NCBI RefSeq assembly: GCF_001194135.2
Contig: NC_068982.1
Location: 102,145,276-102,209,275, forward strand
DNA length: 64,000 nucleotides
Source of the DNA: Octopus bimaculoides
Lineage: Eukaryota
Direction of reading: 5' to 3'
Made by a program: the position numbers and the translations under genes. Below the pieces are notes generated by a model. That model ran no database searches, had not been told where the DNA came from, and worked only from the letters and a program-made list of their open reading frames with translations. Positions 41,105 through 63,053 of the stretch are shown here, in pieces; positions within the stretch are counted from its first letter, which is position 1; the number at the start of each line of letters is the position of its first letter.

Positions 41105-41247
41105 TAATTTATTTCTTTTACTACCCACAAGGGGCTACACACAGAGGAGACAAACAAGGACAGACAAACGGATTCAGTCGATTATATCGACCCCAGTGCA
41201 TAACTGGTACTTATTTAATCGACCCCGAAAGGATGAAAGACAAAGTC
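41105..41247 (-). mobile_element. SINE-B 3' part (tail type 1)
   Basis: cccacaaggggctacacacagagg...gtcgattatatcgaccccag...gaaaggatgaaagacaaagtc. Confidence 0.92.
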
Positions 41248-41505
41248 TCTTTCCTTGTGAACCAGTGAGATATCCTTCAGTCTTCCTTAACATGAATGAC
41301 AAGTGATTTACAGAAAGTATAAACATCACAAAGAGGTTGTCTCCTTGGAATATGCCTTTGCGATACTGTATTCTATCGGTGATGATACAGTAACACTTTG
41401 TGTTTAATTTCAAGATGGTGGCCTACGATGAAGTCATGTCAGCTATGACTCACTATTTTCACTGGAACGTTAGCAAGCTGAAGAGCTTTTGGGATACATG
41501 AGTAA
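41248..41505 (-). mobile_element. RLE LINE (divergent lineage) RT fragment starting at a (CATA)n tract
   Basis: KALQLANVPVKIV...ITDRIQYRKGIFQGDNL...FILSVNHLSFMLRKTEGY. Confidence 0.85.
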
Positions 41506-41593
41506 ATGTATGTATGTATGTATGTATGTATGTATGTATGTATTTATGTATGTATGTATATGTACAGATCTGTATGTTTTATGTATGTATGTA

Positions 41594-42523
41594 TTCTCGT
41601 GCATATTACAGCATATCTAGACATGTTCATATATATTTAAATGATAATTTTCTGGAAAATTTTACAGATTTTTACAATTCCACTGATGAATTCGATCTGT
41701 AGTCTTCGAATTAGCTTTCTCCTTTCTGGTTATGAGAAACCTAATTTCTCAAGATTGGTATTTAGTCAATGTGTTACATATTCCAGCGCCCCAATAATTA
41801 CAGGTATAAACCTGAATTTGTAATCTGAATAGAGTAACTGCAGATTTCTCAATAGTTCAGCGTAGGTGTTCTTTGTTTCAATGATCTTCAGCTTTACGTT
41901 AACATCCGCTGGGCGGCTAATTTCCACAACTGTGCACAGTTTCTCTTCTCCATCCCAAATCATTATATCAGGTCTGTTGTGCCTACATTTTATTGAGGTC
42001 TTCTCTTGTACATTCCACCAGTACTCCTTTTTATTATGAGTGGCTATGGCTTCTACCATCTTGTGGGTTCTTTTTTGTCTTCAGGGTTATCCTTCCAACG
42101 GATTTCAGTATAGAGAGTTCTAGCTACAACATCATGTCCCCTCGGTAGATAATACCGTGATGACATTTTCGGACAACTGCTTATGATCTGGGTGATATCT
42201 TCGGTGTTAACTCTACAAAATCTGCATTGGTTGTCACATACTTTTCCTGCATCTCTATCCCTTTTGTGCATCAGGTACTTGGATGATATTTCCTGTTCCT
42301 GGATTGCAAACGCATACCTTTCAGAGTGGGAGGTATTGTTCCGGCCTACCTTCCAAGTCTTATGATGTTATCAGCCTCATGTATGCAAACTTGGTCAATG
42401 GTCTCATCTTTTAACTACAAAGTGTCGAAGTCCACTTCGACACTTGGTGGTTAAAAGATGTTGCCGAAAGGATATGACACGTCATTCGAAGGCATTTTGG
42501 ATCGTTGTTAAGCCTCTGTCGCC

Positions 42524-42525
<2 letters not shown>
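41594..42525 (-). mobile_element. 5'-truncated RLE LINE (divergent lineage): CCHC knuckle, RLE domain and 3' UTR, between (CATA)n tracts
   Basis: GDRGLTTIQNAFE, CRFCRVNTEDITQIISSCPKMSSRYY, HNRPDIMIWD, VVEISRPADVN, YAELLRNLQLLYSDYKFRFIPVIIGAL. Confidence 0.9.
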
Positions 42526-42554
<29 letters not shown>

Positions 42555-42586
42555 TGTATGTATGTATGTATGTATGTGTGTGTGTG

Positions 42587-42621
<35 letters not shown>

Positions 42622-45600: not shown

Positions 45601-45769
45601 AAGGAAACTACCAATCACACAATTCTAGAAACAACAAAAAATAAGAAACCGCAAAAACAGCAACAGCAACAACAACAACGACGATGATGATAATGATAAT
45701 GACAATAATAGTAATAATGATGATGATAATAATAATAATAATGATAATAATAATAATAATAATAATAAT

Positions 45770-46255
45770 AAAACAATACCTATTGTCATAGGTGCCCTGG
45801 GAATGACAGCGAAACGGGCTGATTACTACCTAGCTGAGATACCAGGAAACCCCAAAATGGCTGAAGTCCAAAAGATAGTGCTCATGGGAACTGCCCATAT
45901 CCTACGTAAAATACTGTCTATGTAATCTCAAATTTTAAAGCAAACATAATTTTCTTATGGTTTCTTAAACATTCACTTGAACAAAACTGTACAAATCCAA
46001 ATATATGGTACCCTAGGCATAACACCTACATGAACTTCTAACTTGTTGTCTCTTNNNNNNNNNNNNNNNNNNNNNNNNNNNNNNNNNNNNNNNNNNNNNN
46101 NNNNNNNNNNNNNNNNNNNNNNNNNNNNNNNNNNNNNNNNNNNNNNNNNNNNNNNNNNNNNNNNNNNNNNNNNNNNNNNNNNNNNNNNNNNNNNNNNNNN
46201 NNNNNNNNNNNNNNNNNNNNNNNNNNNNNNNNNNNNNNNNNNNNNNNAAACATAA

Positions 46256-46257
<2 letters not shown>
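45770..46257 (+). mobile_element. 5'-truncated R4/Dong-type LINE 3' end in a (TAA)n tract
   Basis: KTIPIVIGALGMTAKRADYYLAEIPGNPKMAEVQKIVLMGTAHILRKILSM*, 3' UTR across a gap, ending aaacataaaa+(taa)n. Confidence 0.92.
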
Positions 46258-46322
<65 letters not shown>

Positions 46323-46346
46323 GTAATAATAACAACAATAATAATG

Positions 46347-46378
<32 letters not shown>

Positions 46379-46443
46379 CTTGAGGTCTCTGGGTGAGACT
46401 TGGATCCAACTTGTACAAATGCAAAACAAAAGTCAAACATAAA
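46379..46443 (+). mobile_element. ~65-bp terminal copy of the same LINE family
   Basis: Ends agtcaaacataaaa+(taa)n like the copy at 46248-46257; (TAA)n on both sides. Confidence 0.75.
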
Positions 46444-46473
46444 ATAATAATAATAATAATAGTAATGATGATG

Positions 46474-46530
<57 letters not shown>

Positions 46531-46599
46531 GTAATGATGATGATAATAATAATAATAATAGTAATAATAACAACAATAATAATGATAATAATAATAATC

Positions 46600-46770
46600 A
46601 TTTGGATATTGTCAACAAAACCAATATAGTAAGTGGCTGCTGATCGAAGTATCTCCCAACAGACGGTAACATATTTCCAAAAGCAATGGAATAATTATCC
46701 AAATATAATGATGTGGAAACAGAGATAATTAGAATGTTATGTTTGAAAACAAAAATGGAATCCCTAAAAT
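46600..46770 (+). mobile_element. Older RLE LINE fragment after (TAA)n
   Basis: DIVNKT...PTDGNIFPKAME*LSKYNDVETEIIRMLCLKT resembles the RLE P.D.NI..KE.EKLSKY.DL.IEI..MW motif. Confidence 0.7.
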
Positions 46771-50289: not shown

Positions 50290-50528
50290 TTTTTTTTTTC
50301 TTTACTGCCCACAAGGGGCTACACACAGAGGGGACAAACAAAGAGAGACAAATAGATTAAGTCGATGATATCGACCCCAGTGCGTAACTAGTACTTATTT
50401 AATCGACCCCGAAAGGATGAAAGGCAAAGTCGACCTCGGCGGAATTTGAACTCAGAACATAGCGGCAGACGAAATACCGCTAAGCATTTTGCCCGGAGTG
50501 CTAACGTTTCTGCCAGCTCGTTGCCTTA
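50290..50528 (-). mobile_element. SINE-B full-length (tail type 1)
   Basis: cccacaaggggctacac...gaaaggatgaaaggcaaagtcgacctcggcgg...gccagctcgttgcctt. Confidence 0.94.
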
Positions 50529-50749: not shown

Positions 50750-50957
50750 CCTTTCTACTAGAGGCACAAGGCCTGAAACTCTGAGGAAGGGGACAGTCGA
50801 TCACATCGACTCCAGTACTCAACTGCTACATATATCGACTCCGAAAGGATGAAAGGCAAAGTCGACCACGGCGGAATTTGAACTCAGAACGTAAAGACGG
50901 ACAAAATGCCGTTAAGCATTTTGTCCAGCAAACTAACGATTCTGCCAGCTCGCTGTC

Positions 50958-61865: not shown

Positions 61866-62904
61866 TACCAGTTTTCATACATATATACCAATGTGGTTGA
61901 GAAGATGGTATGATGCCTTAATTTTACCTCGGCTTGTCCTTGTCTATTTTACTTAATTACTTGTATAAACCATCTCTAACCAAGAAATATCTAGCTGTTA
62001 AAGTAAAAACACTTACACCGTAATAGCCATCACCTAGGTAAACTGTTGCGTACAGATGGATGTCAGATTTTTAAGTCAGTTTTTCAATTTTATTGATATA
62101 GTATAGCCTTAAATTAGCCCCTATAGGCTAGAACTTTGATATAAAATCTTTTAAAGTCATGCCAGTAGATCGAAGTCCTCCTGAGTGTGACTTTAAATTG
62201 TGTCCGGTTGTGGAACCTTGTTCGGGATTTCCAGGATTTTAACGAGGGAAGAACCACCTCTTAGCCACTATTGTTCCCATATTTATTCCTACTCAGATTA
62301 GAAATATCTATTAAGGTCCCAGCTATGGGTTAATTTACAAATTAGCAATTCACGGATCGTCTCCGGAAGAAGGTCACTCACAGAATGGTAGATGGGAACC
62401 TTCAGCTTTTTAGCAGCTCCAGACCATTACAGGCTTGAAGGACGAGTGAGTGCGACAGGATCTTTAGAAACCACGAATCCTTGCTGCCATGTATGGTAAT
62501 TTACTGTGCATTTCATAAGTCTAAGGGAGTAATCCCCTATAAAAAATCTGGAAGGGACCCTAAAGCAGATATGTACTACTATAATTAACCAATATCCAGC
62601 GTCCCCTACGGTTCAATGGATGTTGCGCACGTACTAGCTTTTCTTACCCGCGTAGAGGAACCAGATAAGAAGTGGTAAGTGTACTTGAGGCTAAGCACTT
62701 GCAGCTGGAAACAACCAAGGCGCAGCAGATCTGGTTGTATTACTGTCTACTTAATATCGTCAGCCATCGACGAAGGCCAACCTTATATCTTCAGCAACGG
62801 GTCAACTTATTGCAGGTTATACATCAAAGGGTAAAAAATATTTGTGGCTAGATGCCGTCAGCAAAGTGTTGCTGGATAAATATTGTTAACTAAGATTCAA
62901 AATA

Positions 62905-63053
62905 TTTCTTTCTTTATTGCCCACCAAGGGGCTAAACATAGAGGGGGAAAACAAGGACAAAGGAGTTAAGTTGATTACATCGACACCAGAGAGTAACTGG
63001 TACTTATTTAATCGACACCGAAAGGATGAAAGGCAAAGTCGATCTCGGCGGAG
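62905..63053 (-). mobile_element. SINE-B 3' part (tail type 1)
   Basis: ctttattgcccaccaaggggctaaacatagaggg...gaaaggatgaaaggcaaagtcgatctcggcgg. Confidence 0.9.

What the first reader, a model, noticed from the sequence alone, without database searches (positions are those of the whole stretch)
41248..42620. Divergent RLE LINE whose copies start and end at (CATA)n tracts: possible new microsatellite target
Seen: on the minus strand, (CATA)n at 42526-42620 runs directly into GGRGL-like coding sequence (tatggcgacagaggc). The element ends in a short UTR followed by (CATA)n at 41506-41593. A second 5'-truncated RT fragment starts directly at that tract (41505). That gives three element-microsatellite junctions, all CATA and none TAA. 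The RLE region (EISRPADVN, LRNLQLLYSDYKF) differs from the TAA-linked copies. Established: Dong (R4 clade) targets (TAA)n and RLE LINEs are often sequence-specific. Inference: this lineage targets or regenerates (CATA)n, a specificity I do not know from described elements. Caveat: (TATG)n is common in this window.
Basis: partly seen in the sequence, partly recalled or inferred. Interest (0 to 1): 0.75.

Follow-up and report, generated by a model that had tools for sequence, protein, structure and literature searches.

The report
Microsatellite-homing LINE copies in octopus DNA
Two dead, 5'-truncated copies of a retrotransposon with an R2-type endonuclease sit nested in a (CATA)n microsatellite. 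About 30 relatives from other samples show that this lineage regularly ends in, and is usually also preceded by, (ACAT)n or (ACTT)n repeats, so it is a new target variant of the known microsatellite-specific LINEs.

Summary
On the minus strand the layout is (CATA)24, fragment A (thumb, CCHC and RLE, 42524-41637, then a CATA-rich UTR), (CATA)9, fragment B (RT motif B, 41505-41247), then an unrelated repeat. The genome is Octopus bimaculoides or a close relative.

Of 21 relatives whose sequence reaches a simple repeat 3' of the ORF, 8 end in sense-strand (ACAT)n, 12 in (ACTT)n and 1 in (ACTG)n. One further copy reads (ACAT)2(ACAG)n. The repeat starts at a fixed point after conserved UTR motifs. 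Eight of ten definable 5' junctions abut the same repeat unit in the same orientation.

The window copy belongs to a subclade whose known tails are all ACAT-type. The other lineage in the window (27-30% identical) abuts (TAA)n instead.

An AlphaFold model of A's C-terminus matches the R2 zinc-finger and RLE domain. Full-length relatives have no APE domain.

Limits: only one further octopus copy could be fetched, and it was uninformative. R4/Dong versus HERO membership could not be resolved.

The target is not unprecedented. APE-type Waldo inserts in (ACAY)n, and the RLE elements Dong and Togen use (TAA)n and (TG)n. I rate it a new variant of a known kind, of moderate interest.

The parts
42525..42620 (-). 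Upstream (CATA)n tract, about 24 units. It abuts the truncated 5' end of fragment A and is read as the remaining 5' part of the target microsatellite.
   Evidence: TRF (TATG, 24.5 copies, 92% matches); sequence.
41637..42524 (-). Fragment A: a 5'-truncated, degenerate LINE copy running from the thumb motif G(G>D)RGL through the CCHC zinc knuckle (CRFC...Q....C, with H>Q) and the RLE (RPDIMIWD...VVEIS...K) to the stop codon at 41639-41637. It has at least 3 frameshifts, several stop codons, a deletion of about 190 nt relative to L001, and a 56-nt palindrome at 42405-42460.
   Evidence: Translation; tblastn; blastn. AF2 model pLDDT 85.7. Best Foldseek match is R2Tg 9dou_A, E 4e-8, TMq 0.66.
41541..41636 (-). 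3' UTR of fragment A. It is CATA-rich and partly shared with relative L007, including the string AAAACATACAGATC.
   Evidence: Alignment A1; sequence.
41506..41540 (-). Pure (CATA)8.75. It is the 3' tail or target remnant of fragment A and at the same time the repeat abutting the 5' end of fragment B.
41247..41505 (-). Fragment B: a second, older 5'-truncated copy of the same lineage, covering the RT region around motif B (KGIFQGDNLF). It is degenerate and has lost its 3' part.
   Evidence: tblastn: P0023 39%, P0027 36%, P0053 40%, no hit from TAA-lineage proteins. Translation.
41107..41247 (-). Unrelated interspersed repeat of about 140 bp (SINE-like) that ends fragment B. It is not part of the LINE.
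   Evidence: blastn: copies at 50431-50293, 10479-10616 and 63040-62904, 82-91% identical.

Best explanation
Fragments A and B are two dead, 5'-truncated copies of a single-ORF non-LTR retrotransposon. Its ORF has an N-terminal non-APE region, an RT, a GGRG thumb, a CCHC knuckle and a C-terminal PD-(D/E)xK restriction-like endonuclease. This is the R2 superfamily, of Dong/R4 or HERO type.

This lineage integrates by target-primed reverse transcription into tetranucleotide microsatellites of the form (AC[A/T][T/G])n. In the octopus subclade the repeat is (ACAT)n, which is the same as (CATA)n, always with ACAT on the element's sense strand.

B inserted first into a (CATA)n tract. A later inserted into the part of that tract left upstream of B. 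This gives (CATA)n-A-(CATA)n-B, the same nested or tandem pattern seen in relatives such as L005.

Shown here: the domain make-up and RLE fold; the fixed position of the repeat after conserved 3' UTR motifs; the same repeat on both sides of truncated and full-length copies; and the lineage-specific repeat type (CATA against TAA) within one window.

Inferred, by analogy with R2, Dong and the telomere-repeat LINEs: the RLE nicks inside the repeat; the RNA carries repeat units at its 3' end, taken from the downstream repeat by read-through; these units pair with the nicked DNA to set the start of reverse transcription; and 5' truncation follows from incomplete cDNA synthesis.
For: Domains:
- P0027 is an intact 1085-aa ORF with RVT_1 and weak zf-RVT and no APE.
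- Only R2 proteins match it by sequence in the PDB.
- The model of A's C-terminus matches the R2Tg, R2Pm and R2Bm zinc-finger and RLE region, then PD-(D/E)xK nucleases.

3' ends:
- ACAT: window, L006, L007 (degenerate), L008, L020, L023, L031, L036.
- ACTT: L004, L005 (two copies), L009, L011, L012, L019, L021, L024, L025, L026, L027.
- ACTG: L010. L002 reads (ACAT)2(ACAG)n.
- All are on the sense strand. In the metagenome scan, 10 of 10 contigs that reach any repeat end in one of these.

5' junctions: the same unit and orientation are seen at window A, window B, L004, L005c1, L005c2, L008, L009 and L011. In those 16-21 kb loci, the tracts of that unit that TRF finds are the ones touching the element.

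Phylogeny: the window copy groups with L007, L002, L020 and L023, all ACAT-type.

Within the window, TAA-lineage fragments (25260, 45770, 46653, 11384, 21913) abut (TAA)n, while lineage-(ii) fragments abut (CATA)n.
Against: - No empty, pre-insertion site was seen, so true target choice is inferred and not shown.
- The only other O. bimaculoides copy fetched (L001) has no clear repeat at its 5' junction and has lost its 3' end.
- L010 has no upstream repeat and ends in (CTGA)n after a hairpin-like break.
- L008 has only 3 units downstream but 50 upstream.
- (CATA)n is the commonest tetranucleotide repeat in this window.
- The hosts of most relatives are unknown (metagenome or unlabelled assemblies).
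- The trees are rough NJ trees of about 200 aa.
Confidence: 0.72

Rival explanations
1. Tail only, with no target choice. The element makes or carries an (ACAT)n or (ACTT)n 3' tail, through RT slippage or a templated tail as in many LINEs, and inserts at more or less random sites. Upstream repeats arise from RT template jumps onto the tail of a second RNA, from tandem arrays, or from later expansion.
For: - The repeat starts at a fixed point after the UTR, like an element-encoded tail.
- L008 has only 3 downstream units.
- L001 and L010 lack an upstream repeat.
- Tandem copies exist (L005).
- From my own knowledge, R2-type RTs are known to template-jump.
Against: - 5'-truncated copies with different truncation points (window A, window B, L004, L008) each have 9-50 units of the same repeat directly upstream, with no upstream element.
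- Full-length copies begin right at the repeat.
- Near-identical elements carry different units (L004 against L008). This fits a repeat acquired from the target better than a tail encoded by the element.
Confidence: 0.18
2. Passive accumulation or chance. Octopus DNA is very rich in (CATA)n, and LINE fragments simply end up next to such tracts, or survive better in repeat-rich, low-recombination DNA. Drosophila Waldo-A/B near CA repeats has been explained this way.
For: There are 9 ACAT-class tracts in 64 kb, covering 0.8-1.9% of bases. PMC3812793 describes passive accumulation for Waldo-A/B.
Against: The junctions are exact to 0-6 nt and the orientation is constant. In total, 21 of 21 readable tails in unrelated samples fall in three of the 60 strand-specific tetranucleotide classes. 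In the non-octopus loci, the tracts of that unit that TRF finds are the ones touching the element. TAA-lineage copies in the same window pick (TAA)n instead.
Confidence: 0.04
3. Microsatellite birth from the element. The CATA-rich 3' UTR seeded a new (CATA)n tract after insertion, so the downstream repeat is a by-product and not a target or tail.
For: The UTR at 41636-41541 is itself CATA-rich and looks like a decayed repeat. Birth of microsatellites from LINE and SINE tails is well known (PMC3812793).
Against: This does not explain the upstream tracts. It also does not explain why relatives with quite different, non-CATA UTR ends carry clean repeats starting at one fixed base.
Confidence: 0.06

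Closest known systems
Dong (R4 clade RLE LINE; Bombyx mori, Anopheles gambiae, Biomphalaria glabrata)
   Same: It has a single ORF with RT and a C-terminal CCHC and RLE. It inserts in a microsatellite and is flanked by it (PMC3812793, PMC4640811). A (TAA)n-linked sister lineage lies in this same window. Octopus genomes are annotated as rich in Dong-R4 (PMC13282606).
   Different: Dong's target is the trinucleotide (TAA)n, whereas here the repeats are the tetranucleotides (ACAT)n and (ACTT)n. The RLE region is only 27-30% identical to the TAA-linked copies. Clade membership was not shown here.
Waldo (WaldoAg1, WaldoAg2, WaldoFs1; R1 clade)
   Same: It inserts specifically into (ACAY)n, which includes the same (ACAT)n repeat (PMC3812793).
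   Different: Waldo uses an APE-type endonuclease and belongs to the R1 clade of insects. The protein architecture is unrelated apart from the RT. If the shared target is real, it arose by convergence.
HERO clade families reported as microsatellite-specific, and Togen ((TG)n, fish)
   Same: These are RLE LINEs outside R2 proper with microsatellite targets (PMC4640811, citing Repbase Reports 2014 for a leech HERO family). Hero families of about 4.2 kb are annotated in Octopus vulgaris (PMC13282606), close to the 4.3-4.55 kb of full-length relatives here.
   Different: I could not see the repeat units of the HERO families. Togen uses a dinucleotide. No reference sequences were available for comparison.
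R2 (28S rDNA-specific; R2Bm, R2Tg, R2Pm)
   Same: R2 proteins are the only solved structures that match, both by sequence (E 1e-24) and by fold (zinc-finger and RLE region, TMq 0.66). The TPRT mechanism is taken from R2.
   Different: R2 targets a unique 28S rDNA site and has N-terminal CCHH zinc fingers. Here the N-terminus shows no zinc finger (by eye it is a Myb-like W...Y...W pattern), and no HDV-like ribozyme was found at the 5' end.

Membership tests
RLE-encoding non-LTR retrotransposons (R2 superfamily) | Reverse transcriptase domain of LINE type | tested here: met
   RVT_1 is found in full-length relatives P0027, P0148 and P0138. Fragment B carries motif B. P0027 matches R2 proteins in the PDB at E 1e-24.
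RLE-encoding non-LTR retrotransposons (R2 superfamily) | CCHC knuckle followed by a PD-(D/E)xK restriction-like endonuclease, both C-terminal to the RT | tested here: met
   The window reads CRFC...Q....C, then RPD...(x13)...E.S...K. P, D and K are invariant and E is nearly invariant across 18 relatives. The AF2 model has pLDDT 85.7. The best Foldseek hits are the R2Tg, R2Pm and R2Bm C-terminal regions, followed by cap-snatching PD-(D/E)xK nucleases. In the window copy the knuckle histidine is mutated to Q, consistent with a dead copy.
RLE-encoding non-LTR retrotransposons (R2 superfamily) | No APE endonuclease N-terminal to the RT | tested here: met
   No Exo_endo_phos hit in P0027, P0148, P0138 or the L005 N-terminal ORF. 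The window copies themselves lack the N-terminus.
R4/Dong clade | RT groups with R4, Dong and Rex6 in a phylogeny | tested here: inconclusive
   No R4, Dong or HERO reference sequences could be obtained. The only usable text was a 25-aa block at the RT end from the supplement of PMC7650587. In that block the TAA lineage scores best with R4_Hmel, while the CATA lineage has no clear best match.
R4/Dong clade | Dong-type target: insertion in (TAA)n | tested here: not met
   All three junctions in the window are (CATA)n. Relatives carry ACAT, ACTT or ACTG. The other lineage in the window does abut (TAA)n.
HERO clade | RT groups with HERO-1_SP, HEROTn and HERO_BF | not testable with these tools
The 25-aa block lacks the (V/L)R(K/R)WL motif that the HERO and R2 references show, which is a weak hint against HERO.
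Microsatellite-specific LINEs (functional class) | The same simple repeat lies on both sides of independent copies, in one orientation, whatever the 5' truncation point | tested here: met
   Eight of ten 5' junctions and 21 of 21 readable 3' ends meet this.
Microsatellite-specific LINEs (functional class) | The empty target site is an uninterrupted microsatellite, and the endonuclease cleaves that repeat | not tested
No orthologous empty site was available and no biochemistry was possible.

The most novel reading that the evidence does not exclude
Target choice in this lineage may be set largely by the repeat units carried at the 3' end of the element's own RNA, which pair with the nicked repeat. 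On this reading, a copy that lands by accident in a different AC[A/T][T/G] repeat passes the new 'address' to its progeny. That would explain why proteins 85-88% identical, with the same 3' UTR end, sit in (ACAT)n against (ACTT)n (L008 and L004) or in (ACTT)n against (ACTG)n (L009 and L010). It would make this a naturally re-addressable RLE retrotransposon.
Probability: 0.2. Interest if true: 0.75.

Novelty: new variant of a known kind. Interest (0 to 1): 0.5.

Why it matters
Target-specific RLE retrotransposons, R2 above all, are being developed for site-directed DNA insertion. Their natural range of targets shows how specificity evolves. This lineage adds tetranucleotide repeats to the RLE target list. 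It shows repeated switching between (ACAT)n and (ACTT)n among close relatives. It also has apparently intact copies (uninterrupted ORFs of about 950-1085 aa in P0027, L016 and L018-L023) that could be tested. For cephalopod genomics, it links part of the very abundant (CATA)n repeats to a specific LINE family. It also warns that microsatellite markers of this type may share flanks derived from the element.

Tried and rejected
No read-level census and no empty-site test were possible.
- L001, the only other O. bimaculoides copy: it is 5'-truncated inside a zinc-finger gene array, with no clear repeat at the junction, and its 3' end is deleted. It is uninformative.
- Pfam on the RLE region alone gave no family.
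- Rfam, E-value mode, on the full-length copies L005, L006, L009 and L011 found no HDV-like or other ribozyme at the 5' ends. Only weak miRNA-like chance hits appeared elsewhere.
- ARAGORN on L004, L005, L008, L009 and L011 called no tRNA, so the tRNA-like stretch upstream of L004's repeat is unconfirmed.
- Reference RTs for R4 and HERO: the supplement of PMC7650587 holds only R2, BLAG and CRE sequences as readable text, plus one 25-aa block for R4 and HERO. That block was too short to place the CATA lineage.
- blastn of fragment A against the window found no further copies; the hits were only the repeat itself.
- I considered that A and B are one rearranged element. I rejected this because, read on the minus strand, the 3' part (A) comes before the RT part (B), each starts at a repeat, and they do not overlap.
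- Literature searches for an RLE LINE with ACAT or ACTT targets found none in the held library. Repbase Reports are not searchable here.
- I did not use the third homologous-protein search, because it would not have resolved the clade.

Full report
**What is in the window**

The window is cephalopod DNA. The best named protein matches are Octopus bimaculoides XP_014788340 and LOC106878562. One homologous copy lies on O. bimaculoides chromosome record CM046628.1.

Read on the minus strand, the region is laid out as follows:
- (CATA)24 at 42620-42525.
- Fragment A at 42524-41637.
- A CATA-rich 3' UTR at 41636-41541.
- Pure (CATA)8.75 at 41540-41506.
- Fragment B at 41505-41247.
- An unrelated interspersed repeat of about 140 bp at 41247-41107. 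It has other copies in the window at 50431-50293, 10479-10616 and 63040-62904.

Fragment A begins exactly at the repeat with GDRGL. This is the GGRGL thumb motif of relatives; P0021 aligns from residue 38 at 42523. It continues through a CCHC knuckle (CRFC...Q....C, with the histidine mutated) and an RPD...E.S...K nuclease motif to a stop codon at 41639-41637.

Fragment A is a dead copy. It has at least three frameshifts and several stop codons. It lacks about 190 nt that L001 has, and it holds a 56-nt palindrome at 42405-42460.

Fragment B starts within about 6 nt of the repeat, at a point equivalent to P0027 residue ~485. It carries RT motif B (KGIFQGD). It matches only proteins of fragment A's lineage. 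The one nuance is that about half of the '41506-41593 tract' is element UTR, because it aligns with the UTR of a 66%-identical relative (L007).

**What kind of element it is**

Searches with the C-terminal peptide and with P0021 found several hundred relatives. Among them are intact full-length ORFs such as P0027 (1085 aa). These carry RVT_1 and a weak zf-RVT hit and have no APE domain. By sequence, their only relatives among solved structures are R2 proteins (E 1e-24).

An AlphaFold model of the window's own C-terminal 197 residues, built with 18 relatives, reached pLDDT 85.7. Its best structural matches are the C-terminal zinc-finger and RLE region of R2Tg, R2Pm and R2Bm (E 4e-8, TMq 0.66). 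The next matches are PD-(D/E)xK cap-snatching nucleases. The element is therefore an RLE-type LINE.

Full-length genomic copies are 4.3-4.55 kb (L009, L005 copy 2). No HDV-like ribozyme was detected at their 5' ends.

**Two lineages in one window**

tblastn with long proteins separates two lineages:
- Lineage (i) resembles P0148, P0134 and P0138. Its fragments lie at 11384-12813, 21913-22813, 25260-25379, 45770-45922 and 46653-46757. Their ends abut (TAA)n-type tracts.
- Lineage (ii) resembles P0021, P0023 and P0027. It comprises fragments A and B, whose ends abut (CATA)n.

The two lineages are 27-30% identical in the RLE region. So within one stretch of genome, each lineage keeps its own repeat.

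**Relatives elsewhere**

I therefore fetched DNA around relatives with the look-up of encoding contigs (12 look-ups) and one metagenome scan.

3' ends, all on the sense strand:
- (ACAT)n: window A, L006 (the intact P0027 element), L007 (degenerate), L008, L020, L023, L031 and L036.
- (ACTT)n: L004, both L005 copies, L009, L011, L012 (degenerate), L019, L021, L024, L025, L026 and L027.
- (ACTG)n: L010.
- (ACAT)2(ACAG)n: L002.

In the metagenome scan, all 10 contigs that ran on to any simple repeat ended in ACAT or ACTT. The other contigs simply stopped inside the UTR, which is up to about 1.1 kb long. The repeat always begins at a fixed base after conserved UTR motifs.

5' junctions: eight of the ten that could be defined abut the same unit in the same orientation. 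These are window A, window B, L004 ((TTAC)21), L005 copy 1, L005 copy 2, L008 ((CATA)50), L009 and L011 ((TACT)28). They include copies truncated at different points and full-length copies that start right at the repeat. In those 16-21 kb loci, the tracts of that unit that TRF finds are the ones touching the element.

The exceptions are L001 (octopus; no clear repeat at the 5' junction, 3' end lost) and L010.

**Distribution of tail types**

In NJ trees of the C-terminal domain, the window copy falls in a subclade with L007, L002, L003, L020, L023 and P0023. All known tails in that subclade are ACAT-type. ACTT dominates other subclades, and ACAT reappears in the basal L006/L031 group.

Two very close pairs differ in repeat unit:
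- L004 (ACTT) and L008 (ACAT) are 85% identical in protein. Their 3' UTRs end at the same base (...TAATAATGGAATATAT..GAAAC) and are then followed by TTAC or ATAC units.
- L009 (ACTT) and L010 (ACTG) are 88% identical.

All units fit the pattern AC[A/T][T/G].

**How it most likely works**

The pattern matches a target-specific LINE that integrates into a microsatellite. The RLE nicks within the repeat. Reverse transcription starts at the RNA's 3' end, which probably carries repeat units that pair with the nicked DNA. cDNA synthesis often stops early, which produces 5' truncation. The 5' end is then joined inside the same repeat, so the repeat remains on both sides.

In the window, B went in first, and A then went into the repeat left upstream of B.

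The architecture and the association with the repeat are shown here. The nick site, the priming step and the RNA tail are inferred from R2, Dong and the telomere-repeat LINEs (established knowledge and PMC3812793).

The main rival is a tail-only element without target choice, with upstream repeats arising from template jumps. It is not excluded, because no empty site was seen. It fits poorly, however, with long upstream repeats at differently truncated copies that have no upstream element.

Chance or passive accumulation is close to excluded by the relatives. For the window alone it would have been a fair worry, since ACAT-class repeats cover 0.8-1.9% of the window.

**Comparison with what is known**

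Microsatellite-specific LINEs on record are Waldo (ACAY), Mino (AC), Kibi (TC), Koshi (TTC) and Dong (TAA) (PMC3812793). Togen (TG) and some HERO families are added by PMC4640811. So (ACAT)n is not a new LINE target as such, because Waldo, an APE-type element, already uses it. RLE elements with microsatellite targets are not new either.

What I could not find described in the held literature is an RLE lineage tied to tetranucleotide repeats, with switching between ACAT and ACTT. Repbase Reports, where such families might be listed, could not be searched.

Whether the lineage belongs to R4/Dong or HERO remains open. Octopus annotations list both (PMC13282606). The only reference text I could obtain was a 25-aa block. 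It weakly links the TAA lineage to R4_Hmel and says nothing clear about the CATA lineage.

**Verdict**

This is a new variant of a known kind, of moderate interest. The more novel possibility is that the address is carried by the RNA tail.

Noticed in passing
window 11357-12813(+), 21729-22813(-), 25156-25379(+), 45690-45922(+), 46252-46757(+): Five fragments of a second RLE LINE lineage (resembling P0148, P0134 and P0138). Their 5' ends or 3' UTRs abut (TAA)n/(ATA)n tracts, which is Dong-like behaviour in the same window.
   Followed up: partly
window 42405-42460: A 56-nt near-perfect palindrome inside fragment A. Relative L001 has only one arm, so the second arm is an inverted duplication that replaced the neighbouring sequence.
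   Followed up: partly
window 41107-41247; copies at 50293-50431, 10479-10616, 62904-63040, 10696-10769, 50794-50863: An interspersed repeat of about 140 bp (SINE-like, 82-91% identical copies) that cuts off fragment B.
   Followed up: partly
L004 7540-7810: A tRNA-like stretch with A-box-like and B-box-like motifs lies directly upstream of the (TTAC)21 tract into which the LINE copy is inserted. It may be a SINE that shares the LINE's repeat tail. ARAGORN did not call a tRNA.
   Followed up: partly
L005 1519-9498: Two head-to-tail copies of the element, one internally deleted and one near full length, separated and flanked by (CTTA)n. This is a tandem array as expected for a repeat-homing element.
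   Followed up: yes
L012-L015 (four TARA ocean metagenome samples): The same internally deleted derivative occurs on four contigs, with an identical 119-aa C-terminal ORF. It keeps the N-terminus and RT up to about residue 490, then residues 956-1081, followed on L012 by a UTR of about 800 nt ending in a degenerate (CTTR)n. It may be a spreading non-autonomous form.
   Followed up: partly
L025 3748-3885; L010 10854-11101: Compound repeats follow the element: (CTTA)12 (TTAC)5 (TGAC)4 (GACT)3 (GACG)8 in L025, and (CTGA)62 with (CCTG)n in L010. In L010 the 3' UTR breaks at a short hairpin (cttgttcttgc...gcaagaacaag).
   Followed up: no
protein P0065 (1492 aa): A predicted protein that is a read-through fusion of one full copy and a second 5'-truncated copy of a third RLE lineage. 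The two are joined in frame with no repeat between them.
   Followed up: no
protein P0004 (NCBI, labelled Pseudomonadota bacterium MAG): A 248-aa fragment of this eukaryotic LINE is deposited as a bacterial MAG protein. It is probably a mis-binned eukaryotic contig.
   Followed up: no
L001 8100-9900: The O. bimaculoides copy of the element lies inside an array of decayed C2H2 zinc-finger repeats.
   Followed up: no
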